From positions 124,001-188,000 of IMG/VR virus record IMGVR_UViG_3300028840_001395: 64,000 bases of DNA, one strand, 5' to 3'. A program made the position numbers and the translations under genes. A model generated the notes under the pieces. That model searched no databases, was not told where the DNA came from, and saw only the letters and a list, made by a program, of their open reading frames with translations. Below, one piece after another: positions 29,745 to 56,497 of the stretch. Each line of letters opens with the position of its first letter. Positions within the stretch are counted from its first letter, which is position 1.

Positions 29745-29927
29745 ATGCCCGTCGAACGCAACCCCGCCTACACCCAACTCTCGACCGAGGAGTTGAAAAA
29801 GTCCCTCAACGAAGCCCAAAAGGCCCTGCTCCGCGACGAACGCACCAGCATCTCTTCGGATGACCCGGTGTACCGGAGATGGTCGGAGTTGTGCTGGGAG
29901 GAGCGGTGCCGGAGGGCGCTGGCCTAG
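29745..29927 (+). CDS. Hypothetical protein
   Basis: Co-oriented. Confidence 0.5.
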   Translation: MPVERNPAYTQLSTEELKKSLNEAQKALLRDERTSISSDDPVYRRWSELCWEERCRRALA

Positions 29928-30247
29928 CTACGCGAGATTTCGATGAAGGGCTGAGCCTCAAAGGGCTTCCCGAGCCTTCCGCCCTTGATCATGTAACCCA
30001 CGATCCCACTGATACCCCACTCGCTGGTCGTGCTGTCTGCCACCCACGAACGGGAAGGGGATAGGGCATCCCCCGAGATCCCAGAGCGCATGTTCCATCT
30101 GACAGAACCTCGGACATAGCCCCGGTCACGACCATGCTTGATGAGGAAGGCATCAATCTGTTTGAGGTTGATGGAGCCACCCTGCGACCCCAGAGGGACA
30201 CGCGCAGCCTCCAGATAGCGTCGGGCTACCCGGTCTGCCATGTTCAT
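29924..30247 (-). CDS. Hypothetical protein with N-terminal RVARRY peptide
   Basis: MNMADRVARRYLEAA; ATGA-coupled to the upstream gene. Confidence 0.6.
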   Translation of the reverse strand: MNMADRVARRYLEAARVPLGSQGGSINLKQIDAFLIKHGRDRGYVRGSVRWNMRSGISGDALSPSRSWVADSTTSEWGISGIVGYMIKGGRLGKPFEAQPFIEISRS

Positions 30248-30636
30248 CGGTCGTCCTCGACCTCGACCTGGAAGTCTCTGTCGAACAGGCCGTCCTCAAG
30301 GATCACATCCACCGCATCATCTTCCCGAGTCGTGACCGTGAACTGTGCGTGGACGCGGATACCACTCCTCTCGGGCTGGATGACGTTCCGGTCACTCGAC
30401 GTGTCCAACCTGGCGTTGATACGCCGAGGAATGAGGTCAGCAGATTTCTGGATGAGATCCCTGGCATCGGTGAGAAGTTCGATCAGCCCGTCAGTGGACA
30501 TGAGATCCCTGAACTCGACCATGATGTCGAAGCTGATGTAGAACTGACGGGAGTGGGGAATGTAGATCTTGCACTTGTTGCTCCAACGAGTCGCCGTCTT
30601 GGCGATGGTTGGCCCCCACTGTTCGCCCAAGCCCAT
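30244..30636 (-). CDS. Hypothetical protein (N-terminal IAKTATRW)
   Basis: Downstream of a class II motif. Confidence 0.55.
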   Translation of the reverse strand: MGLGEQWGPTIAKTATRWSNKCKIYIPHSRQFYISFDIMVEFRDLMSTDGLIELLTDARDLIQKSADLIPRRINARLDTSSDRNVIQPERSGIRVHAQFTVTTREDDAVDVILEDGLFDRDFQVEVEDDR

Positions 30637-30670
30637 GTCAAACCCCGCTCTAGACAGACGTCACATGACG

Positions 30671-30696
30671 CCTCCTATAAAATCCCCCCCTATAGC
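30671..30696 (-). promoter_or_regulatory. Class II motif copy (GGCTAT-N12-ATAGGAG)
   Basis: Same spacing as other class II copies. Confidence 0.45.
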
Positions 30697-30843
30697 CTAT
30701 CCACCGAAGATGAACCGACACCACCCGATATTTGCATGGTAAATAGCGATTATTACAGGGAACACTACACTTAACTTTCGACCCCCTGCAAGCTCATCTA
30801 AGTGCCTTGTAACCCCCACTTCAGCTCGACATCGTCTTGAGGG

Positions 30844-30875
30844 GGCTTACCCGTAGGTCCAATGGAGTAGTCTAG
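30844..30875 (+). promoter_or_regulatory. Class I bipartite phage promoter motif
   Basis: GGCTTAC-N14-GAGTAGTCTAG. Confidence 0.78.
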
Positions 30876-30921
30876 CCGGAGGACGTGAGATGGACTTCAC
30901 TGGCTACCCCTGGGACATCAC

Positions 30922-31689
30922 ATGAGGGTCAGAGAACTCAACCAGGCATTCATGACCTTCAGGAAGCTCCTCCGGGCTGCCGAAGCCGACGAGACGCTCG
31001 ATGAGGGCACCCGCGCCAACATCCCCGAAGTCAAGGAGTCCTTCAAGGACATCCTGAAAGAGATGAGCGACCAGCGCCGGGAGATCCAGAAAGAGGCCCG
31101 CGAAGAGGAACAACAGGTCATCGATGATGCCACCGAAGAGATCAAGCGGGTGACCGAGAACCTCAAGTGGTACCTGGGCACCATCGACTGCCCCCGATGC
31201 TGGGGTTCCGGCATGGATACCGTCGCCGTCCTCGGAGAACACACGACCGACATCGAGATCGACCCCGAGGAGGCCCGAAGCCTGACCTCGCTGGCCAAGA
31301 TCATCGAGTGGGTACACGACCACCGGAAAGACCCCACGGTCGCACCCGTCTACGAGAAGATGAACCGACGCTGCCAGCTCTGTGAGGGCAAGCTCCGCCT
31401 GCCTCGCAACTTCGACGTGCCCCTCGACAGCGCCATCAAGGGCTGCTGGATCTACCGGAAGAACGCAGGCTCCCTCCGCATGAGGAAGGACGCCCCCGAA
31501 GCCTTCACCAAGCCCCTGGTCGAAGCCGGACTACTCAAGCCCTCCGAGGCTGGAACTGGCATCCTCTTTTTCACCCAGGAGTTCCGGGACAAGCACCTGG
31601 AGAAGGTCGCTCCGGGGAAGTCCAACCTGCAAATCGGGGACGACTACTACTGCCTCGACAGGACATCGCTCAACAAGGAGACACCGTGA
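30922..31689 (+). CDS. Coiled-coil + CxxCxGxG zinc-finger hypothetical protein
   Basis: CPRCWGSG ... CQLCEG; N-terminal helical region. Confidence 0.65.
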   Translation: MRVRELNQAFMTFRKLLRAAEADETLDEGTRANIPEVKESFKDILKEMSDQRREIQKEAREEEQQVIDDATEEIKRVTENLKWYLGTIDCPRCWGSGMDTVAVLGEHTTDIEIDPEEARSLTSLAKIIEWVHDHRKDPTVAPVYEKMNRRCQLCEGKLRLPRNFDVPLDSAIKGCWIYRKNAGSLRMRKDAPEAFTKPLVEAGLLKPSEAGTGILFFTQEFRDKHLEKVAPGKSNLQIGDDYYCLDRTSLNKETP

Positions 31690-31982
31690 GCCAGAACCCA
31701 ACCCTCATCATCAAGGGGAGCCACTACCCCCTCCAGGTCTATCACCACATCAAGAAGGGCTGGCAGCGCATGACCGTCGTGCGAGTCACCTTCGATGGCA
31801 GCCTCGCCAGCCAGAAGAAGGCAATCTTCTCGGCACCTGGGAAGGGGAAGATCGTCCTCCACGGGATGAACGCCAACTACGACGCCGCCGTCGAACTCCT
31901 CATGGGCGAGATCCAGAAGGCTTTGAGCGACGGTCGCCTCGTCTGCCGGGACAACCAGACCCGGCTGGACTTCCCGGCATGA
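31686..31982 (+). CDS. Hypothetical protein
   Basis: GTGA overlap, AAGGAG RBS. Confidence 0.55.
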   Translation: MSQNPTLIIKGSHYPLQVYHHIKKGWQRMTVVRVTFDGSLASQKKAIFSAPGKGKIVLHGMNANYDAAVELLMGEIQKALSDGRLVCRDNQTRLDFPA

Positions 31983-32485
31983 GCTTCCCCGAACGACATC
32001 AGACCATCCACGTCAACTACCGAGGCTCCTACATCGTGGTCAAGGTCAAGCGGGAACTGGACGACCGCAGTTGGGGCATCCTCACCACCTGCGAAGCACA
32101 CTTCGACCGCCACTGCGAGAAGTGCCACAAGCCCGGCAACGGGGGACTCGTCCTCCGAGCCACGTCGGACCGGGGCCTGAGCTTCACGCTCCAAGACCTC
32201 ATGAACAAGGTCAAGGAGGCCATGCGGAAGAAGCGCCTCGCCTTCAACGACCAGAGCGACGACAAGACCCCCAAGGGCTTCTACGTGCCGACCGTGCCCC
32301 CTATCATGTGCATGGACTGCACCCACTGGCCCCACGACAAGGCCAAGCGCCCCGTCTACGACTGGCACCCGGCTACGTGCCCCGGTGGCGCGGACATGAA
32401 CATCTTCGACGGCCAGCCCTACCTGCGAGCCGAATACGACGCCTCCGACTGCGAGCACTTCGCGGAGCGGGAGCGGAAGAAGTGA
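31979..32485 (+). CDS. Cys-rich hypothetical protein
   Basis: CxxxxxxxCxxC and CxxCxHW motifs. Confidence 0.6.
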   Translation: MSFPERHQTIHVNYRGSYIVVKVKRELDDRSWGILTTCEAHFDRHCEKCHKPGNGGLVLRATSDRGLSFTLQDLMNKVKEAMRKKRLAFNDQSDDKTPKGFYVPTVPPIMCMDCTHWPHDKAKRPVYDWHPATCPGGADMNIFDGQPYLRAEYDASDCEHFAERERKK

Positions 32486-32619
32486 GCGACCACGATACCA
32501 AGGAATTCTCCATCAGCGGGTGGGAGATCGACGCCCCCCTGCACATGGCCATCGGCATCGCCGCCATGCTGCTCGGTGTCGGCACGGGTATCCTGATCGG
32601 ATGGGGAATCTGGGGATGA
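32482..32619 (+). CDS. Small single-TM protein (45 aa)
   Basis: MAIGIAAMLLGVGTGILIGWGIW; GTGA overlap. Confidence 0.5.
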   Translation: MSDHDTKEFSISGWEIDAPLHMAIGIAAMLLGVGTGILIGWGIWG

Positions 32620-32631
32620 AGGAGGAGTCCA

Positions 32632-34092
32632 ATGGATAGCCGCACCCTCAAGTTCAAGAAGACCTCCATCACCGTCCACTTCAGCGAGGAAGTGAGTGAG
32701 AACGGCCTCGTCCTCACCACGGCCCGCACCGACTTCTTGAGGAAGTCACCCGGCATCTGCACCCCGCTCACCGTCACCACGAACTGTAACTCCCGAGAAG
32801 ACGCGCTCCAGGCACTCATCTACAAGATCAACAACATGATCGCGGAAGGCACGCTGGTCTACGAGGAACACCCCTACGACCCCACGACGGCCAGCATCTA
32901 CAAGGCCGAAGGCGTCAAGCCCATCATGCCAGGAGACACCGCCCCGCCGCTGCCCGTCATCACAAGACCCCTCGTCTCCAAGCCCAAATACGAGGGCAAG
33001 CCAGGCCAGAGAGTCCTCATCCTCCAGAACATGGAAGACGGACGCTCACCCTACGTCCACCAACACGTCATCCCCCCCAACCGGGACTTCTTCACGGTGC
33101 CCGAGATCGACATCTGGGGCCACGGCTGCGACCGCGAATCCGCCGAACAAGCCTTCAAGCGCCAGCGACGGAGAGCACTCGAACTGGTCGAGGAGTTCGC
33201 CCACGGAACCTACGGCTCCGACCAGTTCGTCATCTACGAGTACCGCTGCGGCAGCGACAGCCCCGTCCTCTCGGAAGGTGCCTACTCCAAGAGCGGATGG
33301 GACGCCCACCGCAAAGCCGTCATCTTCGCCCTGTCCAACAAGCACGAGGCCGAGTTCTACATGCTCAAGTGCGGAGCCGATGACCCCACCCGATTCCGCG
33401 AGGTGCTGACCCTCATCTACAAGAGAGTGGAAACCTACCTCCGGGACAAGAGCGAGATCCGACCAGGTGACCCCGAGAAGGAACTCAAAGAGATCCAGAC
33501 GCTGGCCCAAGCCTACCTGGCGTCATGCTCATCCACTGACCCCGACAAGTACAAGTTCCAAGACCCCAGCCCCATCAGTGACCCCAAGAAGGCCCGCAGC
33601 ATCATGGAACTCATCCTCCGTGCCTGCATGACGACCGAGAACCGCCCGCCCGACCCCCAACTCGCCCTGGATACCATCAGGACAATGGCCAAGGAGTCCC
33701 TGGAACCGGCGAAGCCCGAGCCCAACCCCATGCTCGACATCCTCCCCAAGCTCATCGACTGCTTCAAGACCATCACACAGGACATCAAGGACGATCCCGA
33801 GGTCAAGGAGATCGAAGGCGAGCTTTCCAACTGCATCAAGAAAGCCAAGGAGAAGATCGAGACCCCCGACCCCTACACCGACGCCATCAACCACATCATG
33901 AAGACCATCGAGCAGTCGCTCGACCCCCACCCGCAGGGTGCCAACCGACCACCCGCAGCCATCCTCGATGAGATCATCCACGATGCGGCCAAGGCCCTGC
34001 TCACTGCGGGCTACTACGCCAATGCACCCACCCTGCGTGACCACCTCGACAGCATCGTCCGGGTCATGGAAGCAAGAGAGAACCAGGGGTAA
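32632..34092 (+). CDS. Large hypothetical protein (486 aa)
   Basis: AGGAGGAG RBS; long open frame with C-ending codons. Confidence 0.7.
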   Translation: MDSRTLKFKKTSITVHFSEEVSENGLVLTTARTDFLRKSPGICTPLTVTTNCNSREDALQALIYKINNMIAEGTLVYEEHPYDPTTASIYKAEGVKPIMPGDTAPPLPVITRPLVSKPKYEGKPGQRVLILQNMEDGRSPYVHQHVIPPNRDFFTVPEIDIWGHGCDRESAEQAFKRQRRRALELVEEFAHGTYGSDQFVIYEYRCGSDSPVLSEGAYSKSGWDAHRKAVIFALSNKHEAEFYMLKCGADDPTRFREVLTLIYKRVETYLRDKSEIRPGDPEKELKEIQTLAQAYLASCSSTDPDKYKFQDPSPISDPKKARSIMELILRACMTTENRPPDPQLALDTIRTMAKESLEPAKPEPNPMLDILPKLIDCFKTITQDIKDDPEVKEIEGELSNCIKKAKEKIETPDPYTDAINHIMKTIEQSLDPHPQGANRPPAAILDEIIHDAAKALLTAGYYANAPTLRDHLDSIVRVMEARENQG

Positions 34093-34751
34093 GGAAGAAA
34101 AAAGGCCCCTTGTCTATATAAAGGCCCCTCCCCTGAGAGCATACTTCTTTAACTTTCATCAATGTTTGCAAACTTCGGCCCCCCATAGCCCCCAAAGAAC
34201 CCGTTTCGGATTCGGAAGTGAGATTTTCAGTACAACTTCAATTTGAGATTTTTGACTACCGACCCCCTCTCGAAAAGTTTTTTATCCGGTTTTCACACCC
34301 CTCCCCCTACCTACCCCACCAGTCCTCCCCCTGGTAACGCGAGAGATCCATGACGCCTCACCACGAAGTTGTCAAACTTCGCCTCACATGTTATACTCAA
34401 TGTTTCACCTAGACCCATAGTAAGCAAACTCGTAGTCAGCCCAGCCCCAGGTTTCATTACTTCGGGCAGCCGGGCTCAATCTTTGGGGCTGTCGGGTCGT
34501 GTGAGGTCGGCTTGGGTCGGCGCGGGTTGGAGGCTTCGGGAAGAGTCATTCATCTAAGTGGCCTACAAGGGCTGTGTATCTAAGGCTACAGGCGGCCCGA
34601 AACTGCAGGTGGCCGCCTGCCTTAAAACAGACTGGTTTTTCTTGACCCCCCGCTCTCACACGGGGGAGCTACCCCACCCAGGAGGAGGAGTCCTCCTCGT
34701 GTCGCCTGCGGGAAGTGGACGCTGCCCCGGAGACTCTGCGGGGTGGGGTAG
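34093..34751. other. Non-coding AT-rich gap with GC-skew switch; candidate replication origin
   Basis: AT-rich 34130-34300; plus strand C-rich to about 34470, then abruptly G/T-rich. Confidence 0.5.
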
Positions 34752-35789
34752 CTAGGCTTTCGTCTGCCTGCGCCAGTCAGCCGCCACCTGACGGATGAGA
34801 CTCATCCCTCTGCTCACCATGTTCATGCTGACCTGAATCAAGTCCGACAGCTCTGCCCGTGTGTACCCCTCCTCCACATAGGGCAAGAGCCGGAGAGCTA
34901 CCTGACCGTCCCTGGTCTGCTGTACCCGTGGGTCTGCCCGGATGAACTCCACCAAGGCGTTGGCTTCCAGACACTGGGCCTGACTGGGCTCCTGGCACCC
35001 TGTAGGGTTCGACAGGAGACTCGCACCCGAAGCCACGTCCACAGAGGTCAGGTCACCATGATCCCAGCCCGGTGCCCCTACCTGCTCGACAGCCCTCCGC
35101 CGGGTCATCCTCCGATGGTAGTTGGCCACGATGCAGCCACAGACCATGTGGACGTAGTGGCCGAAGGAGGACTTCCTGGAGTCCCAAGGGCACCGACCCT
35201 TGTTCCTCGACAGCAGACCCTTGTAGACCTCCTGCAACACGTCCTCGGGGTCATAGCCAGCAGCATAGACCCGCTGACCGAACCCAGCATAGAACAGCTT
35301 CGCCACCTCATGTGACCGATTCACCAGGTCAATACCCAGAGGTTGAGTCGAAGTTACGAAACTCGCGTCCGGCGCAGGGTCGAAGTTTGGAACTTCCGTG
35401 ACCGTGAGGGCCGGGGAAGTTTCGATAGGCATCCCGGAGGGCGTAGTTGCGAGGTCATCGGGAAGAAAGAGGTCGAGAGCGGGTACTATGGGTTGGTTGT
35501 GAGCGAGGGTGAGGCTTGGGGGGGCATGGCGGCCTGTCTTGAAGTATCGGTCGAAGGTCCAGTTGCGAGCGTTGGGGTGGCCGGTGATGGCGATGAGCAA
35601 CTGGCGTGCTGACGTGAAGGTCTGGACGGGGCCTCCCCCTGAAGCCAGGGAGGGTCGGAGTTGGAAGTCCCCGTCCGGTGTCAGAATCACTTTGTCTGCA
35701 CCATCCCTCCACCGACTGTAGAGATACTTCGACTTCGCAGTGCGGGTGCCTTCGCTTCGTTTTGCGCGAAGGTTTGACTTTCCGGGCAT
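34752..35789 (-). CDS. ECF-like sigma70-family sigma factor with N-terminal extension
   Basis: Region-2-like DPEDVLQEVYKGLL...WDSRKSSFGHYVHMVCGCIVANYHRR; region-4-like GYTRAELSDLIQVSMNMVSRGM. Confidence 0.65.
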   Translation of the reverse strand: MPGKSNLRAKRSEGTRTAKSKYLYSRWRDGADKVILTPDGDFQLRPSLASGGGPVQTFTSARQLLIAITGHPNARNWTFDRYFKTGRHAPPSLTLAHNQPIVPALDLFLPDDLATTPSGMPIETSPALTVTEVPNFDPAPDASFVTSTQPLGIDLVNRSHEVAKLFYAGFGQRVYAAGYDPEDVLQEVYKGLLSRNKGRCPWDSRKSSFGHYVHMVCGCIVANYHRRMTRRRAVEQVGAPGWDHGDLTSVDVASGASLLSNPTGCQEPSQAQCLEANALVEFIRADPRVQQTRDGQVALRLLPYVEEGYTRAELSDLIQVSMNMVSRGMSLIRQVAADWRRQTKA

Positions 35790-35954
35790 CCCCTGACCCC
35801 CTTCGGTCTAGCGACCCTCCGTTTTATGGCACGTCATTCATTTGCTCCCTCTACCATTCCTACGGATAGGGCGTTGGGCTGTCAAGAAATACGGTGTCAT
35901 CCGGGTGGGGTTTTTTGTCGCGTGGGGGTATCTTGGGCGTATGGAGGTGCATGG

Positions 35955-36170
35955 ATGGAGTCCAATGTTCATCTTCATGGGCTGTGGGTTGGTGACACGG
36001 TGAAGTATCCTCTCCGCCGGGGGGAGTCTCCTCCGGGTGAATTCTCGCGGGTGAGGTTGATCGACAGTCCGAATGACCTGGAAGCTGAGGGCGAGGTCAT
36101 TGGTGTTCGGGGGACGATGGTTCAGGTTCGGTTGGTCGAGGAGCCTCGGGAGTTCGATAGAAGGGTGTGA
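35955..36170 (+). CDS. Small beta-rich hypothetical protein
   Basis: GGAGGT RBS upstream; VGDTVKY...GEVIGV. Confidence 0.4.
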   Translation: MESNVHLHGLWVGDTVKYPLRRGESPPGEFSRVRLIDSPNDLEAEGEVIGVRGTMVQVRLVEEPREFDRRV

Positions 36171-36267
36171 CCAGGGCTTTAGCACCACCCGCTGCAATCC
36201 CGCAGCGGGCTTCGGGTAGAGGAGGTGCTGACACTCCGGCCCCTGGTCACGATTGGAGTGCTGACCT

Positions 36268-37020: not shown

Positions 37021-37023
37021 GTG

Positions 37024-37254: not shown

Positions 37255-37271
37255 GGCTTGCCTCCCGTGCT

Positions 37272-40201: not shown

Positions 40202-40202
40202 G

Positions 40203-41946: not shown

Positions 41947-41956
41947 CAAGGAGAGA

Positions 41957-43250: not shown

Positions 43251-43701
43251 CAAGCAACGAGAGAAGTCGGTCAAGCTCCTCGGTGAGATGCAGGCCGAGG
43301 CGAAGGCCTTCAAGAAGAAGCTCCAGAGCGAGGGTCACACTCGGAAGGAGATCAAAGAGCTTCTCGATCCGATGATCAGCCAGTACGAGGATGTTCAGGC
43401 CGACATCGACCAGTACGACCGCTGGAAGGGTGGCGACCTCACTGACTTCGAGGCAGCAGACCTCGACCAACTGGGCATCTTCCTCATCGCTGCCCGAATC
43501 GCCAAGGGCGTGACCCAGCGCGAGTTGGCCGAGAGGTTGGGGGTCAACGAGTCCAGTGTGAGCCGGGACGAGCGCAACGACTACCACGGCATCACCATCC
43601 AGCGGGCCGTCAAGATTCTGGCGGCGCTCGATGTCAGCGTCGTGATCGACATCTGGCCCCAGCGGATTCTGCCACCTCCTGCCGACCACGCCGTGCCGTG
43701 A
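43228..43701 (+). CDS. XRE-family HTH protein (antitoxin-like)
   Basis: LIAARIAKGVTQRELAERLGVNESSVSRDE; GGAGGT RBS. Confidence 0.85.
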   Translation: MTVLIRNDKQREKSVKLLGEMQAEAKAFKKKLQSEGHTRKEIKELLDPMISQYEDVQADIDQYDRWKGGDLTDFEAADLDQLGIFLIAARIAKGVTQRELAERLGVNESSVSRDERNDYHGITIQRAVKILAALDVSVVIDIWPQRILPPPADHAVP

Positions 43702-44006
43702 GAGTCTTTGAGGGCGGCGAGCACGCTGCCGCCAAGGCCCGCCAGGTCGCCTCCACCAAGGGCACGATCACCATCTGGTTGACGGTGGACAGGGACGGCA
43801 AGGAGATCGGCTGGCTATACGGCCCCGAAGAGAAGTTGCTCCACATCGGACGCATCATCTACAGCCGGACGGGCAAGGTGTTCGTTATCGCACAGGTCGG
43901 GACAGAGCACCAGCACATCACCGTCTACCAGCCGCAGCTTCAGAATGCTATCAAGCTCTGTCGGTTCGGTGAAATTTCCGACGACCCCTACCGCCGTCGC
44001 CGTTAG
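43698..44006 (+). CDS. Hypothetical protein
   Basis: GTGA overlap. Confidence 0.5.
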   Translation: MRVFEGGEHAAAKARQVASTKGTITIWLTVDRDGKEIGWLYGPEEKLLHIGRIIYSRTGKVFVIAQVGTEHQHITVYQPQLQNAIKLCRFGEISDDPYRRRR

Positions 44007-44009
44007 ATT

Positions 44010-44035
44010 GTCTATGAGCCTCCTCTCCATAGGAG
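44010..44035 (+). promoter_or_regulatory. Class II motif copy (GTCTAT-N13-ATAGGAG), overlapping an RBS-sequestering hairpin
   Basis: gagcctcct...aggaggctc inverted repeat covers the AGGAGG of 44049. Confidence 0.45.
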
Positions 44036-44048: not shown

Positions 44049-44678
44049 ATGACCACACTCGCGGACTGGACATTCGTCAATAAGACCGCCGCCGCCGATG
44101 TTCCACAGATCAGGCAGTGGGTGGACGAGTGGGAGACCGACGACTATCCCTACGGGCGTTTCCGCACCACAGCCCGCTGGTGGGTAGACAAGAAGGGCAA
44201 CAAGGCCCGCGTAGGCCGCACCACGGTCAACCCCAAGAACGGGCGGGTCAACAAGCCCAAGTACACCACCTACGGGGCTGCAGCGAAGCTGGGCGTGGGT
44301 GCTGACGGTCGGGTGTACATCTTCGTCGGTGGTCCGGGCCAGATCAGGGTCATGGGCGGAGACATGAAGTATAGCCTGGGCAGTGTGTTCACCGATGACC
44401 CTCGGTATGCCGAGTTCGCCAAGCGGCTCAAGATCAAGACCGTGGACAGCCCCAGTGGCGGGACGGCACAGGTCAAGAAGGTCCAGAATGGGGCTCTCAT
44501 TGATGGTCTCCAGGGGACTTCGATGAGACTTCGTGAGCTTCTTGACCTGGCGGGGCTGAAGTCGAGAGATCAGGCGGACATCGACAAGGTCAAGCGGAAG
44601 GACACGATCACACACACCCTCTGGACGGTCATCTTCAAGTCTGACCGCCCCGATTACACCATCCAGGTCAAGACCTAG
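44049..44678 (+). CDS. Basic hypothetical protein with N-terminal LADWTFVNKTA peptide
   Basis: AGGAGG RBS; N-terminus shared with 54864..55190. Confidence 0.7.
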   Translation: MTTLADWTFVNKTAAADVPQIRQWVDEWETDDYPYGRFRTTARWWVDKKGNKARVGRTTVNPKNGRVNKPKYTTYGAAAKLGVGADGRVYIFVGGPGQIRVMGGDMKYSLGSVFTDDPRYAEFAKRLKIKTVDSPSGGTAQVKKVQNGALIDGLQGTSMRLRELLDLAGLKSRDQADIDKVKRKDTITHTLWTVIFKSDRPDYTIQVKT

Positions 44679-49766: not shown

Positions 49767-49781
49767 AGGGGCACCTCCTAC

Positions 49782-49813
49782 AGAGACTACTCCGCCGGAG
49801 TGCCGGGTAAGCC
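49782..49813 (-). promoter_or_regulatory. Class I bipartite phage promoter motif
   Basis: GGCTTAC-N14-GAGTAGTCTCT. Confidence 0.72.
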
Positions 49814-49815
49814 CC

Positions 49816-50223: not shown

Positions 50224-50236
50224 CCGGGCCTCCCTT

Positions 50237-50713
50237 CTAGTCGCAGTGGATGCAGAGGTTGTAGCGGTCGATGGTCTGCCCCTCGTCATCGGTCAGGAAC
50301 AGCCGGGTGTTGCACAGGACAGACGTGGACGGCCCCATGTCCGGGTCATCCCCCCGCAGCCAGAACTCGATGAGGTAGGCGTGGGTGTCCTCCACGGGGA
50401 TGTCCCGGAGACGGGGATGCTTGGCCCGTTCCTGATCCCGAGAACGGACGTGCTTCAGGTGTCGCCGGGCCTCGTCGTGGCTGAACTCGGACTGGCTGAA
50501 GTTGACCTGTCGGGAGGGGTAGATGATGGCCCCCTGCAACTCTACAGGCTCGCCCTTGTCATCAACGTGACCCTCGGGATAGAGCAGGATGGGGCCACCA
50601 TCCTTCCCCATCGCACCCGGTTCGGCCACGACACACCGGAGAACCCGGCACCGCCGGATGTCCTCGATGTAGGCCCAGCCCTCATCACCAACGGTCTGCA
50701 TCTTGAGAATCAT
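50237..50713 (-). CDS. Hypothetical protein
   Basis: GAGGAGG RBS; C-terminal FLTDDEGQTIDR. Confidence 0.6.
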   Translation of the reverse strand: MILKMQTVGDEGWAYIEDIRRCRVLRCVVAEPGAMGKDGGPILLYPEGHVDDKGEPVELQGAIIYPSRQVNFSQSEFSHDEARRHLKHVRSRDQERAKHPRLRDIPVEDTHAYLIEFWLRGDDPDMGPSTSVLCNTRLFLTDDEGQTIDRYNLCIHCD

Positions 50714-50767
50714 GACGTACCTCCTTCTGACTACTGACTACGCACTACTATTAGCCAGATTATACCG

Positions 50768-52204
50768 TCAGAAGGGGATGTCATCGACCTTCTCCTGGTG
50801 GAGAAGACAGTCGTCGGTCGAGGTCGTGTCACTACCCTGGACACAGGTTGTGGCTCCTGAGCCTGGATCAGTGCGCTTGTATTTACACCCCCGGCACAGG
50901 GACTCGCTCCGTTTCTTGGGCGGCGGGGGCGGCGGCTCTTCCAGTGTCCAGTCCTCACACTTCGGGTCATCGGCATACCGCTCGGGACGGGTGCAGCCAT
51001 TGTTGTAGTGCCAGCATCCTTCGCAGCCCGTGATCCCATGCTCGAAGAACGGCACCATCGCCCCGCTGGCGACCAGCTCGCGCACCTGATCGTCAGAATC
51101 ATCCCCCATCATGTGGATGATATGGCCCTTCCCCCAACGATTCTCGCCAATCTCGACCGTCTGGGTGGTCAGGAACTTGTAGCCCTTGACCTCGACGGGG
51201 TGGGGAACCATGCCAGCAACGACCGAGAGCCAACCCACGAAGTCATCCCAGGAATGACTGCCGAAGACGACCCTCGACTTCTCCCGATAGACCGGGTGGC
51301 TACCCCCGTCTGTTTCCTCTCGGGTCAGAATCCCAACGGTATCATCCACGCCGATCACGAACTCGACGTACCAATCTTGACCGAGAGAAGCGAAGATATC
51401 GGCCTTCGGAATTCCTTTCATCGGAGAGGTGATGTTCCAGTCGTGACCTGGCACCCACGGAAAGACCTCCTTGATGGTCGGCAGGATGTTCAGGGCGATG
51501 GCCAACGGAGGGCCTTCCAGGTCGGGTGTCTCGGGCGGCGGCTCCTCGGGAGGCATTGGGACCAGCCAGCCCCGCAGGTGGTCAGGATCGGCGCTAAGAT
51601 GATTTCCCGACCCCTTGTGTCGGATGAGATCACCCTTGACTTCGACCTCATCATCCTTGGCAAAGCCCACGTCGTTCACGAAGAACGGCACCGTCACCAC
51701 ACAGGGAACCCACTGGCCTCCGTTCTCGACCTTGACAAGCAAGCCTTCCCCGATGGCCTTGGAAAGCTCATCGGCGGCTACCGTCCACAGCAGATGAGGG
51801 TCTGTCCGTATCCCCCTCGCCGCCCCGTTCCGCAGGTTGATCTCCACGATCTGACCCTCGGTCAAATCGAACTTCGGGACAAGCTCGAAGTCACCCGTGA
51901 CTACGAACGAAGAAATCTCTTCGACGGGGACGGGCGGCTTGGCGACCTTCATCGGCTTCATCCGGGTGTCGAGGACTTCCGAGAGATGCTTGTCTGCGGG
52001 GAGCCACTTGCCCCCGGTAGCCCGGCAGCGGAACTTGCTAGCACCCGCTCCCGAGAACAAGACCTCGATGGTCTCCCCGATCTTGACGTGCTGCTGGCCG
52101 TCCTCCGTCTGTAGGATGAAGTTCCGGGTGACATCGTAGTCCCTGACCTCGGGGGTCACGTTCCCGGTGGAGGCGAAGCCGTGGGGCATGTCTTGGCTGG
52201 CCAC
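50768..52204 (-). CDS. DFxGW-family paralogue with N-terminal beta-barrel-like repeats and C-terminal Cys clusters
   Basis: KEVFPWV...WDDFVGWLSVV; CEGCWHY, CRGCKY. Confidence 0.7.
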   Translation of the reverse strand: MASQDMPHGFASTGNVTPEVRDYDVTRNFILQTEDGQQHVKIGETIEVLFSGAGASKFRCRATGGKWLPADKHLSEVLDTRMKPMKVAKPPVPVEEISSFVVTGDFELVPKFDLTEGQIVEINLRNGAARGIRTDPHLLWTVAADELSKAIGEGLLVKVENGGQWVPCVVTVPFFVNDVGFAKDDEVEVKGDLIRHKGSGNHLSADPDHLRGWLVPMPPEEPPPETPDLEGPPLAIALNILPTIKEVFPWVPGHDWNITSPMKGIPKADIFASLGQDWYVEFVIGVDDTVGILTREETDGGSHPVYREKSRVVFGSHSWDDFVGWLSVVAGMVPHPVEVKGYKFLTTQTVEIGENRWGKGHIIHMMGDDSDDQVRELVASGAMVPFFEHGITGCEGCWHYNNGCTRPERYADDPKCEDWTLEEPPPPPPKKRSESLCRGCKYKRTDPGSGATTCVQGSDTTSTDDCLLHQEKVDDIPF

Positions 52205-52207
52205 GGA

Positions 52208-52330
52208 TTAGCCCCCATACGCCTTGATCAGATAGTCCGCCAGGAACCCAGCACCGATCAGAATCCACGTCGCCGCGAGGAACCACCAGCAGGCCTTGAG
52301 CACGTCCTCGGGGATGTTCGGGACTCTCAC
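52208..52330 (-). CDS. 40-aa single-TM peptide (absent from ORF track)
   Basis: WWFLAATWILIGAGFLADYLI; GTGA overlap. Confidence 0.5.
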   Translation of the reverse strand: MRVPNIPEDVLKACWWFLAATWILIGAGFLADYLIKAYGG

Positions 52331-52920
52331 TTGCCCATCCCCATCACCACGCGGGGCTCGGGCAGGTCATCCCTCACGAACTCACAGCGACCATAGGTTG
52401 CCTCCGAGATCACGAAGGTCTGCTTCCCTGTTCGGATGACCGGGATGCCAAACAGCATATCTGGCTGGGAGTCAGGGGCATACTCGTGGCCCAGCGCCTC
52501 CTGAACCTTGTGTCTCATCAAGTGCCAGGAGAACTTGCCTCCCAGGTAGATCGTCCCCGGAGGGATGTCGGCCCTCTCCAGGGCGAGAACGGCCTCTCTG
52601 ACACGCATCAGGGCGTCCCAGGTGCATTCCCGGAGAGCCTGCTTGCGGTCTCGACGCTTCTGGGCCGTCCCATCCTCCTCGTAGCTCTGCTGGATGAAGG
52701 GCTCGATCTCGTCCCTGAACTCCCCGTCGTAGGCGAAGGCGGTGGTGATGTCGTCACGGGTCAGGTGGGGATAGACTTCGTGGACGGCCTGGAACCAGTC
52801 CGCCTGGGTTCCCACGTCGCGGGTGATTCTGGCGATGCGCCAGATGTAGCAGCCCTTGATGTGAGCGATACCCTTGGCGTCCTTCTGAACCTCGGGAAAC
52901 AGGTCTTCCTGGTCGCTCAT
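52327..52920 (-). CDS. DUF433-like N-terminal domain protein
   Basis: VYPHLTRDDITTAFAY; GGAGG RBS. Confidence 0.55.
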   Translation of the reverse strand: MSDQEDLFPEVQKDAKGIAHIKGCYIWRIARITRDVGTQADWFQAVHEVYPHLTRDDITTAFAYDGEFRDEIEPFIQQSYEEDGTAQKRRDRKQALRECTWDALMRVREAVLALERADIPPGTIYLGGKFSWHLMRHKVQEALGHEYAPDSQPDMLFGIPVIRTGKQTFVISEATYGRCEFVRDDLPEPRVVMGMGK

Positions 52921-53462
52921 CTCTTCCTCCCGTGGCCCAGGATTCCGTGGAGTTCGTCTCGCAGGGACTCCGCTTCCTTGATGATCTCGATGGCCTTGTC
53001 CACGCACTCGGCGTGGGTCGGGCTGCCGGGCAGCGGGACGGCCTCGGCCAACCCCTGCAGCAGGTTCTCGTAGTGATGGAGAGTGGCCCGAAGCTCTCGC
53101 TCCGACTGGGACTTCCCTGCCGGGGTCTCGCTCTGGTCGGCACCGAGGAGCGCGATGATGTTGTCAGCGGCCTCCTTCAGGTCGGAGTGGTCGAGATAGC
53201 CCTCGGGAGTCCGCTTCTCGACCAACTTCATCTCACCCGGCCCCAACGTGTCGCCCGGATCCTCGCTGTCGAGCCACTCGATCAGGGCCTCGACGCACTC
53301 CTCCGAGTGCGGGGCCTCGTTGCCCTGGGGACAGTCGTGAAAGAGCGGGCAGCCCGTGAAATGAACCGGACAACCTCCGAACCGGCCCGCAATCGAGGAC
53401 TCCCAGGTGAGCCGACACGTCTCCACCACGTTGCGAACCAGGATGCTGTCACGGCGGCTCAT
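52917..53462 (-). CDS. Hypothetical protein
   Basis: GGAGGT RBS after a class I variant; CP.H..GCP...DCP. Confidence 0.6.
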   Translation of the reverse strand: MSRRDSILVRNVVETCRLTWESSIAGRFGGCPVHFTGCPLFHDCPQGNEAPHSEECVEALIEWLDSEDPGDTLGPGEMKLVEKRTPEGYLDHSDLKEAADNIIALLGADQSETPAGKSQSERELRATLHHYENLLQGLAEAVPLPGSPTHAECVDKAIEIIKEAESLRDELHGILGHGRKR

Positions 53463-53479
53463 CCAGCACCTCCTCTGGG

Positions 53480-53511
53480 CTATACTACTCCGACCAGGGG
53501 GTGCGTAGCCC
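53480..53511 (-). promoter_or_regulatory. Class I motif variant
   Basis: GGGCTAC-N14-GAGTAGTATAG. Confidence 0.6.
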
Positions 53512-53546
53512 CCCCACTTCGGGGTATGATGCACGGGGAGGATACG

Positions 53547-53849
53547 ATGGCCAAGAAAGTCGTCAACTGTCCCTACTGCGAGAAGCCCGGCGTCCTGAAA
53601 ACCCGCGAGTCCACCTTCCGCCGGGAGGACAAGTTCGTCACCATCCAGGTCAAGCACTACGAGTGCCCTTCGGGCTGCGAGATGCCCCGAGGCCAGGGTG
53701 ACCCACCCCTGCCGGAGAAGTACCGGGTGTTCGGCTGGGAGGATATGGAGTTGATGAAAGAGAACTCGGAGCAGGCCAAGCTCGCCTGGCTGGCCAAGTA
53801 CGGCGAGGAGATGCCCAAGCCCCGTAGGATTCGGCGTAAGCAGCCGTGA
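53547..53849 (+). CDS. YgiT/MqsA-type zinc-finger protein
   Basis: CPYC...TF......VTIQVKHYECP..C; GGAGG RBS. Confidence 0.6.
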   Translation: MAKKVVNCPYCEKPGVLKTRESTFRREDKFVTIQVKHYECPSGCEMPRGQGDPPLPEKYRVFGWEDMELMKENSEQAKLAWLAKYGEEMPKPRRIRRKQP

Positions 53850-53935
53850 AGGTCATCGCGTTCATCGGGATGACCTTGGTGATGCTCAGCATCCTCTGGT
53901 TCGGGCTCAATGGAGAAGACGATGGAGAGGAATGA
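53846..53935 (+). CDS. 29-aa single-TM peptide (absent from ORF track)
   Basis: MKVIAFIGMTLVMLSILWFGL + acidic tail; GTGA overlap. Confidence 0.4.
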   Translation: MKVIAFIGMTLVMLSILWFGLNGEDDGEE

Positions 53936-54581
53936 CCGCCGGACAGGGCCACTGACAGCCCGAGTGTTCAACGTGGAACATCCGTTCATTTACGTGGAAG
54001 TCTCCGCACCTGGAGAGTCCGGCCCCGCTGACAATCCCTTTCCCTGGAAGGACTCACTGGGCCTCGCAGTCCGGCTCGGAGAGGATGCCTTCCTCAAGCT
54101 GGCCAACTCGCCCGAAGCCACGCCGCCCTGCGTCATCGTGGACGTGCCTCCGACCACGAGGGGCAATATCCTGCCCAAGATCGAGGGTTGGGAGCAGGAA
54201 TTTGCTCGGGACATGGAGAAGGCGACTGACTTCACCCAGGAGGATCAGAACTTCTGGACGATGGACAAGAAGATGGTCGTCCTCGTCCCGGCAGCCCATG
54301 TCCTCTACCACGATGACCGGAACGGCAAGTCGGGAGCCTACCTCTGGATGCGAATCCACCTGCTCGGCTCCGAGACTCCGGTCGAGGACATGGAGAGCCT
54401 TCTCAAGGCGCTCGGGTACAAGCACTTCCGCGATGAGGATGCCAGCAACGGCATGTTCACCCGCTGCGGCGAGGCCTACTGCTACATCAGCCCCGAATGG
54501 CGCTCCGGCTGGTGGCAGAATCACGCCCTGGCCGAAGGAGGCATGGGGCGCTACCACTGGCGAGGAGAGCCTTGTGAGTAG
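53910..54581 (+). CDS. Hypothetical protein
   Basis: Co-oriented, GC3 bias. Confidence 0.6.
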   Translation: MEKTMERNDRRTGPLTARVFNVEHPFIYVEVSAPGESGPADNPFPWKDSLGLAVRLGEDAFLKLANSPEATPPCVIVDVPPTTRGNILPKIEGWEQEFARDMEKATDFTQEDQNFWTMDKKMVVLVPAAHVLYHDDRNGKSGAYLWMRIHLLGSETPVEDMESLLKALGYKHFRDEDASNGMFTRCGEAYCYISPEWRSGWWQNHALAEGGMGRYHWRGEPCE

Positions 54582-54693
54582 AGGTGGGGGCCGGGCCTGT
54601 CAGGAGTCGAGCGGCGACCCGGCCCCCTGGCTCGCAGGCCGCTCACTCTACCTATGTCTGCGACCCCCGGAAAACTTGCAGGAAAAGTGACCT

Positions 54694-54867
54694 ATGCCCG
54701 TATATGAATACGAATGCCCCAAGTGCAAGCACCGCTTCGAGCGCCTCGTCAAGATCAGCGACCCGCTGCCCGAGTGTCCCGAGTGCGGTCACAAGCCCGT
54801 CGAGAAGGCTGTGAGCGTATCGACGTTCAAGCTGAAGGGTGGGGGCTGGGCCGAGGACGGGTACTAG
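54694..54867 (+). CDS. FmdB-family zinc-ribbon protein (57 aa, absent from ORF track)
   Basis: MPVYEYECPKCKHRFE...PECPECG...FKLKGGGW. Confidence 0.85.
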   Translation: MPVYEYECPKCKHRFERLVKISDPLPECPECGHKPVEKAVSVSTFKLKGGGWAEDGY

Positions 54868-55190
54868 CCGTAGGGCTTGTGCTCGACCACGATGGTCACG
54901 ACCTCGGTGCCGTCGTTCCGGCGCTTCGGGCGTCCTCTGACCTCGGTGACGAACTGATCACGCTTGAGTTCGGACGAGATCGCACGAACCTTGTCCTTGG
55001 GGATGTTGTAGAAGACGTAGCTCTCCTTGCGCCCCGAGAACTCGACCACGAAGTCCAGATCCCAGTCGTAGTCGAAGCCCCTCGGAAGATGCTTCCTGAC
55101 GACCTTGACCGCATCACGACCCGTTGGCCCACGCTCATCGAGATGCAGCCGCGCCTGGCGCTGAACGAACGTCCAGTCCTTGAGGTCCAT
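54864..55190 (-). CDS. Hypothetical protein with N-terminal LKDWTFV peptide
   Basis: 3' part of track ORF 54864..55892; N-terminus matches 44049. Confidence 0.6.
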   Translation of the reverse strand: MDLKDWTFVQRQARLHLDERGPTGRDAVKVVRKHLPRGFDYDWDLDFVVEFSGRKESYVFYNIPKDKVRAISSELKRDQFVTEVRGRPKRRNDGTEVVTIVVEHKPYG

Positions 55191-55195
55191 CGTTG

Positions 55196-56032
55196 CTACC
55201 CTGGCCTGTAGATGTTGTGCTTCCGCGCCCAGTCGAGAAGCTCCCGGTCGAAGTCGTGGAACTCCCGGCGGTGATTCATGAACCGGATGTGAGCCATCTC
55301 GTGAATCATCGTCCGCATCACGGCAGAGTACTTCCGCAGCTTCATCGGGTTCTTCTTCTGTCGGACGTTCAGGGCGATGACGCCCCCGCCGCCCCGGTTG
55401 AAGCCCAGCGACCCCTCGGCCACGGACTCCTTCATCTTCTTCCAGCGGAGGCCGAACTCCTTTGCAAGAGGCTTCACGTCGCGCTCGATGCGCCCCATGA
55501 TGGCCGCGACCTCTTCCTTGCCCTCGACATCGTAGACCGAGTAGCCGTTGATCACGGTCCGGGTCCAGTCCTTGCGCTGCTCGACCCGCTGCTTCTTGCC
55601 TTCCAGATGCTTCTTGCCCCACCTGACCCACTTGGGCAGATACTTCTGCTTGACGTAGTTGTCGGCGTCCATCCCCCACAGAATCAGGAGCTTGTTGCCC
55701 TTGATCTTGGCCTTGGAGCGGCGGTTGTCGGTGTTGACCTGGGTGACCTTGATGCCGTCGATCACCGAGTCCTCGTAGGGGCCGATGGCCTTGGCGGTCT
55801 TTCCTCGGGCCTTGATGCAGGCCTTGCAGTTGGCCTTCGCCCGACCGTCGTTCGACAGGATAGTCCAGTTCTCGTCCACACCCTTCCCGCACAGCGTCTT
55901 GTCCTCGTTCTCGGCCCAGTGGATTGGCCCGTAGGGCTTGCCGCTCTTTGAGCGGACACGCTGAACCGTGTAGAGGGGATACTTGCCCTTGGCACCCAGC
56001 CAGCGGGCGGCGATGCGTTCGGCGGTGTTCAT
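55196..56032 (-). CDS. WLM/SprT-like zincin metallopeptidase with N-terminal RIAARW peptide
   Basis: SLGFN...IALNVR...MRTMIHEMAHIRFMNHRREF. Confidence 0.75.
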   Translation of the reverse strand: MNTAERIAARWLGAKGKYPLYTVQRVRSKSGKPYGPIHWAENEDKTLCGKGVDENWTILSNDGRAKANCKACIKARGKTAKAIGPYEDSVIDGIKVTQVNTDNRRSKAKIKGNKLLILWGMDADNYVKQKYLPKWVRWGKKHLEGKKQRVEQRKDWTRTVINGYSVYDVEGKEEVAAIMGRIERDVKPLAKEFGLRWKKMKESVAEGSLGFNRGGGGVIALNVRQKKNPMKLRKYSAVMRTMIHEMAHIRFMNHRREFHDFDRELLDWARKHNIYRPG

Positions 56033-56457
56033 GTGATCAACATGTCGAAGCCGTCCCTCTGGACAAGGGCGGTGATTCGCTCCAGGGTGACGTTGATGAC
56101 TCCCTGCATGGAGCCTCTCCCGCTCCAAGTGGCGGTGCCCGTCACCTCGGCCTTGATGCTTCGTCCATCGGCCCACATGATGACCTTGCCGTAGTCGGCC
56201 TTCGCCCGGCCACCAGCCTTGCTGATGCCAGTCTTCAGCTCGGTGGTGACCTTCTGCGCGACCTTCCGCAAGAGGGCGTCCCGCTTGACGATCTCTTCGA
56301 GGACAGTCGTGCCACCCATGCTGGAAGTGACGATGATGTCGGCGCTTTTGTCCCGGGTACGGACTTCGACCAGCCCGTAGAGGCCCACAGCGGTCTTGGT
56401 GACGTAGCGGGAGGCGACTCGGCGGCGCATGGAACGGTCGGACTTCATCTGGGCCAT
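56029..56457 (-). CDS. Hypothetical protein with N-terminal RVASRY...KTA peptide
   Basis: GGAGG RBS after a class II motif. Confidence 0.65.
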   Translation of the reverse strand: MAQMKSDRSMRRRVASRYVTKTAVGLYGLVEVRTRDKSADIIVTSSMGGTTVLEEIVKRDALLRKVAQKVTTELKTGISKAGGRAKADYGKVIMWADGRSIKAEVTGTATWSGRGSMQGVINVTLERITALVQRDGFDMLIT

Positions 56458-56471
56458 GAGAATCCTCCACA

Positions 56472-56497
56472 GGTTCTACGGAGGGAGTCTCATAGAG
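56472..56497 (-). promoter_or_regulatory. Class II motif copy (CTCTAT-N12-GTAGAACC)
   Basis: Identical spacing and 3' box to the copy at 62067. Confidence 0.55.

What the first reader, a model, noticed from the sequence alone, without database searches (positions are those of the whole stretch)
29924..56497. Second promoter class (CTAT-N12/13-RTAG) precedes genes sharing short N-terminal peptides: candidate late, capsid-targeted proteins
Seen: the motif lies upstream of 304(-), 30636(-), 44049(+), 56457(-) and 62048(-). Products of three of these units start with related peptides: DRVARRY (29924), RRVASRYVTKTA (56029), ERIAARW (55196), IAKTATRW (30244), LADWTFVNKTA (44049) and LKDWTFVQRQA (54864). 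The 29924-30636 unit is inverted relative to its neighbours. Established: T4 internal proteins use a short N-terminal capsid-targeting sequence cleaved by the prohead protease. Inference: these are late genes for virion-packaged, ejected proteins with a shared targeting or cleavage tag.
Basis: inference. Interest (0 to 1): 0.62.

Follow-up and report, generated by a model that had tools for sequence, protein, structure and literature searches.

The report
Late promoter and portable protein address tags
In this 436-kb uncultured phage, a real late-gene promoter motif drives both the virion genes and about 29 enzymes and orphan proteins that carry short swappable end peptides, most likely address labels for loading them into the phage head, though that destination is untested.

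Summary
The DNA motif is real. There are 7 matches at 5 places in the window against 0.7 expected. Genome-wide there are 35 good sites, nearly all intergenic, at a median 21 nt before a start codon. The refined form is CGnTA-N5-6-CTAT(A/G)-N12-GTAG(A/G)A.

It behaves as the LATE promoter. It heads the operons for terminase and portal, for head protease and major capsid protein, for tail terminator and sheath, and for the tail-fibre paralogues. A different motif (CTTAT-N15-GAGTAGTCT) precedes rIIA/rIIB and NAD salvage genes.

- Three are copies of tag A, A-x-R-[VI]-A-A-R-[YW]-[LV] (21 core matches vs 0.37 expected).
- One gene carries tag B (QWGPTI).
- Two share tag C (DWTFV).
- A fourth, tag D, lies outside the window.

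Tags sit at N-termini, C-termini or between domains. All tagged genes lie in late units (16 of 34 late units, 0 of 55 early units). WLM-protease orthologues in related phages carry tag A at either end, or tag D or E instead. Carriers are topoisomerase IB, UvrD, RNA-repair enzymes, proteases and orphans. A 2469-aa multi-enzyme carrier lies between the portal and protease genes, as darB does in P1.

Packaging into the head is the best reading (about 0.5) but is unproven.

The parts
334..365 (-). Class-2 (late) promoter-like site before gene 2-304(-)
   Evidence: Strict motif match; matrix score 20.6.
2..304 (-). 100-aa protein with a Lys/Ala/Pro-rich, histone-H1-like N-terminal half; first gene of a late unit
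   Evidence: Translation; no Pfam family.
30675..30707 (-). Class-2 promoter-like site (palindromic CTAT...ATAG) before 30244-30636(-)
   Evidence: matrix score 24.7.
30244..30636 (-). 130-aa orphan protein; tag B (QWGPTI) at residues 4-15 (nt 30592-30627)
   Evidence: no Pfam family.
29924..30247 (-). 107-aa orphan protein; tag A at residues 4-14 (nt 30206-30238). Its start overlaps the stop of 30244-30636.
   Evidence: only identical copies in 5.8 billion proteins.
44000..44032 (+). Class-2 promoter-like site before 44049-44678(+); its upstream TAG is the stop codon of gene 43698-44006
   Evidence: matrix score 27.7.
44049..44678 (+). 209-aa orphan protein; tag C (DWTFV) at residues 4-14 (nt 44058-44090)
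   Evidence: no Pfam family.
56476..56507 (-). Class-2 promoter-like site heading the unit 56029 > 55196 > 54864
   Evidence: matrix score 27.8.
56029..56457 (-). 142-aa orphan protein; tag A at residues 11-21 (nt 56395-56427)
   Evidence: only identical copies found.
55196..56032 (-). 278-aa WLM/SprT-type zinc metalloprotease (HExxH motif); tag A at residues 4-14 (nt 55991-56023)
   Evidence: Pfam WLM E=2.4e-16. In the AlphaFold model the tag is a lone helix (residues 3-12), residues 14-77 have low confidence, and the core has pLDDT of 95 or more.
54864..55190 (-). 108-aa orphan protein; tag C (DWTFV) at residues 3-13 (nt 55152-55184)
62071..62102 (-). Class-2 promoter-like site before 61047-62048(-)
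   Evidence: matrix score 25.8.
61047..62048 (-). 333-aa P-loop ATPase-like protein, with no clear tag. It is followed by 59929-61050(-), 373 aa, of unknown function.
   Evidence: Weak AAA_25/nSTAND3 matches below the Pfam cut-offs.
28371..28406 (+). Weaker class-2-like site (CTTT in place of CTAT) before the small ORF 28415-28651(+)
   Evidence: Matrix score 17.4; ORF listed.

Best explanation
The window belongs to a complete 435.8-kb uncultured tailed phage. Its major capsid protein is of the Bacillus phage G / Tunturi_5 type.

The CTAT...GTAG element is this phage's late promoter. Its full form is roughly CGnTA, 5-6 nt, CTAT(A/G), 12 nt, GTAG(A/G)A, ending about 20 nt before the start codon.

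Besides the virion genes, this promoter drives about 29 genes whose products carry one of at least four short helical address peptides:
- tag A: RVAARY/W-L
- tag B: QWGPTI
- tag C: DWTFV
- tag D: a 25-residue peptide containing PE-x-R and LxPLL

The tags are portable. They work from the N-terminus, from the C-terminus or between domains, and orthologues exchange one tag for another.

The most likely role (inferred, not shown) is to dock these late-made proteins to a component of the assembling prohead. Candidates are the strongly acidic scaffold-like protein or the inner capsid surface. The carriers are topoisomerase IB, a UvrD helicase, RNA-repair enzymes, WLM and C39 proteases, very basic DNA-binding-like proteins and many orphans. 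Docking would enclose them in the head and deliver them with the DNA into the next cell, as T4 internal proteins and P1 DarB are.

Shown here: the motif, its link to late genes, the tags, their exclusive link to late units, and their portability. Inferred: that the motif is a promoter, and that the destination is the head.
For: Motif enrichment and position.

Late identity. Sites directly precede these units:
- 25664 > 849-aa protein > terminase > portal
- 16695 > 2469-aa carrier > protease > acidic 543-aa protein > major capsid protein
- tail terminator > sheath
Sites also precede tail-fibre-like paralogue families. The other motif precedes rIIA/rIIB and NAD salvage genes.

Tag A: 21 core matches vs 0.37 +/- 0.63 in 300 shuffles. 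14 of 21 lie in terminal zones that make up 14% of residues. Synonymous codons vary freely.

Link to late units:
- 17 of 18 tag-A carriers have a class-2 site as nearest upstream promoter, against 0 of 251 class-1 genes (p = 3e-7).
- 11 of 34 late units vs 0 of 55 early units hold a tag-A carrier (p = 8e-6).
- With all tags, 16 of 34 vs 0 of 55.

Portability:
- WLM orthologues carry tag A at the N-terminus, tag A at the C-terminus, tag A before the core in fusions, or tag D or E instead.
- Paralogues 30313 and 417362 share a body but carry tag D and tag B respectively.
- The LR745208 orthologue of 76632 has tag D where ours has tag A.
- In the model the tag is a lone helix on a low-confidence tether.

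Head link:
- The 2469-aa carrier (LigT, nucleotidyltransferase, topoisomerase IB and GNAT domains, three tags) lies between the portal and protease genes. In P1, darB lies next to prt and pro, and its first 30 residues are a capsid-targeting signal (PMC9024508).
- T4 internal proteins are diverse apart from a conserved capsid targeting sequence (PMC3012670).
- A 741-aa, very charged late protein carries tag D three times.
Against: - No virion proteome, no isolate and no RNA data exist.
- The head protease, which must itself enter proheads, has no conserved tag.
- The carriers' activities (topoisomerase, helicase, protease, RNA repair) could equally serve late DNA processing in the cytoplasm.
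- Four or five different tags imply several binding sites or receptors.
- The nearest cultured relative, Tunturi_5, shows no tag A.
- The promoter role rests on position and orientation only.
Confidence: 0.5

Rival explanations
1. The tags are docking motifs for a late-phase hub that is not part of the virion. An example would be a DNA maturation or repair complex that cleans, untangles and resolves replicated DNA (and repairs RNA) before packaging. The tagged enzymes would then work in the infected cell and would not be ejected.
For: The named carriers act on DNA or RNA: two topoisomerase IB proteins, UvrD, a WLM protease of the kind that removes DNA-protein adducts, a HAD RNA-repair domain, and LigT and nucleotidyltransferase domains. 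No recognised structural protein carries a tag.
Against: The replication proteins (DNA polymerase, DnaB-like helicase, clamp loader, RecD2) carry no tag. Many carriers are small orphans. The largest carrier sits inside the head gene cluster. Tags are exchanged freely among orthologues, which suits an address better than a catalytic partnership.
Confidence: 0.2
2. The peptides are recognition or cleavage sites for a protease, or degrons. The protease could be the head maturation protease, or the tagged WLM or C39 peptidases. Internal copies would mark where the 2469-aa and 985-aa proteins are cut into separate enzymes.
For: Internal tags lie between recognised domains of the 2469-aa and 985-aa proteins. 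Two carriers are proteases. The T4 targeting sequence is removed by the prohead protease (established knowledge; PMC3012670).
Against: A 9-25-residue conserved helix is far longer than known prohead-protease sites. Copies 4-15 residues from an end would release only tiny fragments. Several unrelated tags substitute for each other. Internal copies are explained by gene fusion, as in fused WLM orthologues that keep the tag before the core.
Confidence: 0.12
3. The motif is not a promoter. It would instead be a binding site for a regulator or an RNA-level signal, and the shared peptides would be by-products of mosaic recombination among late genes with no common function.
For: No transcript ends are available. 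15 of 35 sites overlap the stop codon of the preceding gene, so they could act in coupling or processing.
Against: Sites are oriented with the downstream gene, sit 7-50 nt before start codons, and also occur in divergent intergenic regions. The peptides are conserved at protein level with free synonymous variation. They are kept, at shifting positions, in orthologues that are only 46-70% identical.
Confidence: 0.08

Closest known systems
Capsid targeting sequence of phage T4 internal proteins IPI-IPIII
   Same: A short conserved peptide on otherwise very diverse, late-made, non-structural proteins, several of them counter-defence factors. In T4 it is sufficient to load foreign proteins into the head (PMC3012670).
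   Different: The T4 signal is N-terminal only and is cut off by the gp21 protease. Here tags are also C-terminal and internal, at least four unrelated tags exist and are interchangeable, the sequences are unrelated to T4's, and no gp21-type protease family was found. Packaging is not shown here.
Phage P1 Dar system: DarB and its N-terminal 30-residue capsid-targeting signal
   Same: A protein of about 250 kDa with several enzyme domains is encoded next to the portal and prohead-protease genes and is loaded into heads through a short terminal signal (PMC9024508). The 2469-aa carrier here sits between portal and protease.
   Different: No sequence homology to DarB was found; Tunturi_5's DarB-like protein found no match in this genome. 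The enzyme domains differ (topoisomerase IB, nucleotidyltransferase, LigT, GNAT). There are three internal tags rather than one N-terminal signal.
Encapsulin cargo-loading peptides
   Same: Short peptides at the C- or N-terminus of unrelated enzymes direct them to the inside of an HK97-fold shell and are portable between cargos (established knowledge).
   Different: Those systems are bacterial nanocompartments, not virions. Their consensus is Gly/Ser/Leu-rich, unlike these tags. No shell-binding was tested here.
Phage late promoters, for example the T4 late promoter TATAAATA read by gp55/gp33
   Same: A separate promoter class that marks virion and late accessory genes and is distinct from the early class.
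   Different: Here the element is long and tripartite, spanning about 35 nt. No gp55-like factor was identified, only a sub-threshold sigma-70 region-2 match in an early gene.

Membership tests
Late promoter class of a tailed phage | Lies upstream of, and oriented with, virion structural and packaging genes | tested here: met
   Sites precede the terminase/portal, protease/capsid and tail terminator/sheath operons and the tail-fibre paralogues.
Late promoter class of a tailed phage | Distinct from the motif before classic early genes | tested here: met
   CTTAT-N15-GAGTAGTCT precedes rIIA, rIIB and NAD salvage genes. Sites were assigned to one class or the other: 61 class-1 and 35 class-2.
Late promoter class of a tailed phage | Transcripts start just downstream and appear late in infection | not testable with these tools
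   Only three DNA metagenome runs hold the sequence; there is no RNA run.
Portable short linear address peptide | Over-represented against composition-matched shuffles and enriched at protein ends | tested here: met
   21 observed vs 0.37 expected (maximum 3 in 300 shuffles); 14 of 21 in terminal zones.
Portable short linear address peptide | Selected at protein level, not a DNA repeat | tested here: met
   All synonymous codon families are used at each core position.
Portable short linear address peptide | Moves between ends, or is replaced by another tag, among orthologues | tested here: met
   WLM family; paralogues 30313/417362; the 76632 orthologue in LR745208.
T4-type capsid targeting sequence | Strictly N-terminal and followed by a prohead-protease cleavage site | tested here: not met
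   6 C-terminal and 7 internal copies of tag A. No shared cleavage motif is seen after the N-terminal copies. Peptidase_S77 is absent.
T4-type capsid targeting sequence | Carriers are present inside virions, and the tag is sufficient for loading | not testable with these tools
Encapsulin-type cargo-loading peptide | Binds the inner face of an HK97-fold shell protein | not tested
   The capsid protein was identified and an 85-sequence alignment was built, but the complex job could not be sent.

The most novel reading that the evidence does not exclude
A clade of huge marine and sediment phages uses a small code of interchangeable address peptides (tags A, B, D, E and perhaps C). The tags work from either protein end. 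They sort dozens of late-made enzymes and orphan proteins into the virion, so each phage ships a customised enzyme kit with its DNA: topoisomerase, helicase, RNA repair enzymes, proteases and counter-defence factors. The tags would then be a general, transplantable loading signal for giant capsids.
Probability: 0.4. Interest if true: 0.85.

Novelty: new variant of a known kind. Interest (0 to 1): 0.7.

Why it matters
If the tags are loading signals, the cargo of an uncultured giant phage could be read directly from its sequence. That would show which enzymes such phages deliver at the moment of infection, including topoisomerase IB, RNA-repair and protease activities. It would also provide short peptides, usable at either end of a protein, for loading foreign proteins into very large capsids.

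Independently of the destination, two results stand. The work gives the early and late promoter consensus of an uncharacterised lineage of 300-500-kb phages. It also shows that unrelated short peptides are swapped among orthologues, which is rare direct evidence of modular protein addressing in viruses.

Tried and rejected
- DNA search of the window against GenBank phages: no match.
- Single-protein scan of IMG/VR with the 985-aa topoisomerase protein: nothing.
- PHROGs and Pfam on most large structural-region proteins: no families.
- Pfam searches of the genome for HK97 capsid, terminase C-terminal domain, sheath, beta clamp and T4 protease: none. The terminase N-terminal domain gave only weak hits. 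The head and tail genes were found only by tblastn against annotated phages and by blastp against Tunturi_5.
- Atlas look-ups gave only a weak tail-terminator lead and an EF-hand lead.
- PDB sequence searches for terminase, portal and the acidic protein were blank or uninformative.
- tblastn of the tag-D and tag-B carriers 414521 and 417362: no match.
- A clamp-binding reading was dropped: no beta clamp family was found and the replisome proteins are untagged.
- A tag-like stretch in the C-terminal half of the head protease was dropped because it is not conserved in LR745208.
- A candidate phage sigma factor (274511-275968) stayed below threshold.
- No RNA run holds the phage.
I re-derived them from the files instead.
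Full report
**What the window is.**
The window is bases 124,001-188,000 of a single 435,804-bp contig with 62% G+C. It is an IMG/VR virus record rated 100% complete. It has a 144-bp terminal repeat, 71 tRNA genes and one tmRNA gene. Megablast against GenBank phages found nothing.

Protein-level searches place it in a lineage of very large tailed phages:
- The terminase (genome 19990-21864) is 58% identical to that of an uncultured 485-kb phage, LR745208. It is 31% identical to that of the 309-kb Tunturiibacter phage Tunturi_5.
- The 291-aa protein 2891-3766 is the major head protein. It is 87% identical to LR745208's, 49% to Tunturi_5's and 38% to Bacillus phage G gp27.
- 6322-7950 contains the head maturation protease.
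- blastp against Tunturi_5 also identifies the portal (17704-19401), tail terminator (397646-398845), tail sheath (391663-396969) and a minor tail protein.

I made my own gene map from codon statistics: 496 genes covering 91% of the genome.

**The DNA motif.**
Genome-wide there are 32 matches, 29 of them intergenic although intergenic DNA is only about 9% of the genome.

A weight matrix trained on the intergenic matches finds 35 good sites and extends the motif upstream:
- C (88%), G (74%), n, T (97%), A (65%)
- then five to six bases
- then C-T-A-T (94-100%) followed by A or G
- then 11-14 bases (12 in 23 of 35 sites)
- then G-T-A-G (62-94%) followed by G/A and A

The element ends a median of 21 nt before a start codon and is always oriented with that gene. 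In 15 of 35 sites the upstream T-A-(G/A) coincides with the stop codon of the preceding gene.

A second, more numerous motif also exists: CTTA(T), 15-17 bases, then GAGTAGTCT. It has 61 intergenic sites.

That these elements are promoters is inferred from position and orientation. No RNA data exist for this phage.

**Which class is late.**
The CTTAT...GAGTAGTCT motif precedes rIIA (window 18790-20943), rIIB (17738-18763) and the NAD synthetase / nicotinamide phosphoribosyltransferase pair (8924-11466). These are classic early-type functions.

The CTAT...GTAG motif directly precedes these units:
- 25664 > an 849-aa protein > terminase > portal
- 16695 > the 2469-aa protein > 8568 > 7950 > protease > a 543-aa protein with 29% Asp+Glu > 3782 > major head protein
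- tail terminator > sheath

It also precedes paralogous families that share N-terminal anchor regions and carry beta-helix or tail-fibre-like matches: 255581/257263/267399/279362, 117574/118711 and 261843/265888. I therefore read it as the late promoter.

**The peptides.**
A six-frame search shows that DRVARRY, ERIAARW and RRVASRY are copies of a genome-wide peptide, A-x-R-[VI]-A-A-R-[YW]-[LV], which I call tag A.
- The core R-[VI]-A-x-R-[YWF] occurs 21 times in the predicted proteome. The expectation is 0.37 +/- 0.63, with a maximum of 3 in 300 residue shuffles.
- Eight copies lie in the first 20 residues and six in the last 15. Those zones hold 7.9% and 6.0% of all residues. Seven copies are internal.
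- Every synonymous codon family is used at the core positions, so selection acts on the protein, not on a DNA repeat.

The 30244 protein does not share IAKTATRW with anything. It shares the preceding QWGPTI(K/R)EA (tag B) with five other proteins, four of them at the N-terminus and one at the C-terminus. LADWTFV and LKDWTFV (tag C) have only these two members.

A fourth tag, D, is about 25 residues long and contains PE-x-R and L-x-P-L-L. It heads 30313 and 111946. It occurs three times (start, middle, near the end) in the very charged 741-aa protein 414521-416746.

**Link between promoter and tags.**
- Of 18 genes with tag A, 17 have a late site as their nearest upstream promoter on the same strand. 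None of the 251 genes assigned to the early motif has tag A (Fisher p = 3e-7).
- Carriers cluster in operons, so I also counted units. 11 of 34 late units hold a tag-A carrier, against 0 of 55 early units (p = 8e-6).
- Counting tags A to D, 29 genes in 16 of 34 late units are tagged, against none in early units.

**Portability.**
The WLM protease of the window has 33 relatives on contigs up to 437 kb. Its conserved core begins at the same point in all of them. What precedes or follows the core differs:
- tag A at the N-terminus (several relatives)
- tag A at the C-terminus, in a QRVAAAWL form (P0009, P0022, P0023)
- tag A between a fused kinase or other domain and the core (P0008, P0028)
- tag D (P0004, P0007, P0013, P0026, P0027)
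- a third helix, tag E (P0012, P0015, P0018)
- nothing

Other examples point the same way:
- Inside this genome, the paralogues 30313 and 417362 are 40% identical over 213 residues but start with tag D and tag B respectively.
- The LR745208 orthologue of 76632 starts with tag D, whereas ours has tag A internally. The orthologues of 31044 and of the gene after the portal keep diverged A-like tags.
- A profile of tag A finds 2-6 copies in each of four partial or complete relatives and none in Tunturi_5.
- The AlphaFold model of the WLM protein shows the tag as a lone helix (residues 3-12), then a low-confidence stretch (residues 14-77), then a confident core.

**Who carries the tags.**
Named carriers are:
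- two topoisomerase IB proteins
- a 2469-aa protein with LigT-like, nucleotidyltransferase (PolyA_pol head), topoisomerase IB and GNAT domains and three tags between them
- a UvrD helicase
- a HAD domain of RNA-repair proteins
- the WLM protease
- a C39-like peptidase
- a SWIM-finger protein

The rest have no family, and the two small window proteins 29924 and 56029 have no relative in 5.8 billion proteins. Replication proteins (DNA polymerase, DnaB-like helicase, clamp loader, RecD2, ribonucleotide reductase) are untagged.

**Mechanism.**
The facts established here are:
- short, conserved, helical peptides tethered to either end of unrelated proteins
- free exchange of the peptides among orthologues
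- strict confinement to late units
- a giant multi-enzyme carrier encoded between the portal and protease genes

These facts fit an address label for the assembling head best. The precedents are the T4 capsid targeting sequence (PMC3012670) and P1 DarB. DarB is a 250-kDa enzyme encoded next to prt and pro, and its first 30 residues suffice for loading (PMC9024508). Encapsulin cargo peptides are a third precedent, from established knowledge.

The strongly acidic 543-aa protein between protease and capsid genes is a plausible scaffold. It would be a plausible partner for the Arg-rich tag A, but this is a guess. I rate head loading at about 0.5. The rivals are a late non-virion hub (0.2), a protease or degron signal (0.12), and no common function or not a promoter (0.08).

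**What I could not do.**
- There are no RNA runs, so no reads were laid.
Their loci do show both motif classes.
- No other genetic code was used.

**Verdict.**
It covers one true DNA motif and three different peptide families rather than one. The T4-like details (N-terminal only, cleaved) are not supported, and virion loading remains a well-motivated hypothesis.

Noticed in passing
window 11545(-), 14782(-), 21328(-), 22331(-), 22409(+), 25582(+), 28672(+), 30846(+), 49792(-), 53490(-), 58256(-), 63628(-): Sites of the other promoter-like class (G)GCTTAT, about 15 nt, then (A)GAGTAGTCTAGG. There are 61 intergenic sites genome-wide. It precedes rIIA, rIIB and NAD salvage genes, so it is probably the early class. 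A similar motif (GGGGCTTAG...GAGTAGT) occurs in the relative L025.
   Followed up: partly
window 2-304(-): A late-promoter gene for a 100-aa protein whose first 40 residues are Lys/Ala/Pro-rich like histone H1 tails. It could be a DNA-condensing internal protein.
   Followed up: no
G000 414521-416746(-) = L020:5031-7256: A 741-aa, very Lys/Glu/Asp-rich late protein carries tag D three times (start, middle, near the end). It has high codon adaptation and no match in GenBank phages.
   Followed up: partly
G000 4704-6335(-) = L001:4704-6335: A 543-aa protein between the protease and capsid genes with 29% Asp+Glu, long acidic runs and one EF-hand calcium loop. It is scaffold-like by position and composition.
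   Followed up: partly
genome-wide, 15 of 35 late sites; e.g. window 44004-44006: The conserved upstream T-A-(G/A) of the late motif doubles as the stop codon of the preceding gene, so promoter and gene end overlap at a fixed distance.
   Followed up: partly
G000 about 85-125 kb, just left of the window: 67 of the 71 tRNA genes, and the tmRNA gene (90688-91048), cluster here.
   Followed up: no
window 8924-11466(-): NAD synthetase-like and nicotinamide phosphoribosyltransferase-like genes: an NAD salvage pair under the early motif.
   Followed up: no
346-kb ENA contig carrying P0022 (no DNA available): In a relative, the WLM gene with a C-terminal tag sits in one direction with an AcrVA2-like gene and an ADP-ribosylglycohydrolase gene. 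This looks like a counter-defence neighbourhood.
   Followed up: no
G000 255581-258798, 267399-268886, 279362-280735; 117574-120033; 261843-267333: Three families of late paralogues share 80-170 N-terminal residues and differ in the rest, some with beta-helix matches. This is the pattern of exchangeable receptor-binding proteins on a common anchor.
   Followed up: partly
G000 274511-275968(-) = L012:8740-10197: A 485-aa protein under an early motif has a sub-threshold sigma-70 region-2 match (E = 0.0045). Pfam scanning did not confirm it. It could be the factor that reads the late motif.
   Followed up: partly
G000 upstream of 390602-390997(-): A textbook sigma-70 promoter (TTGACA, 17 nt, TATAGT) sits inside the tail region, unlike either phage motif.
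   Followed up: no
window 30640-30920: A divergent intergenic region holds a late site for 30636(-) and an early-type site (30846, +) for 30922(+). The inverted two-gene late unit is an island among genes of the other class.
   Followed up: partly
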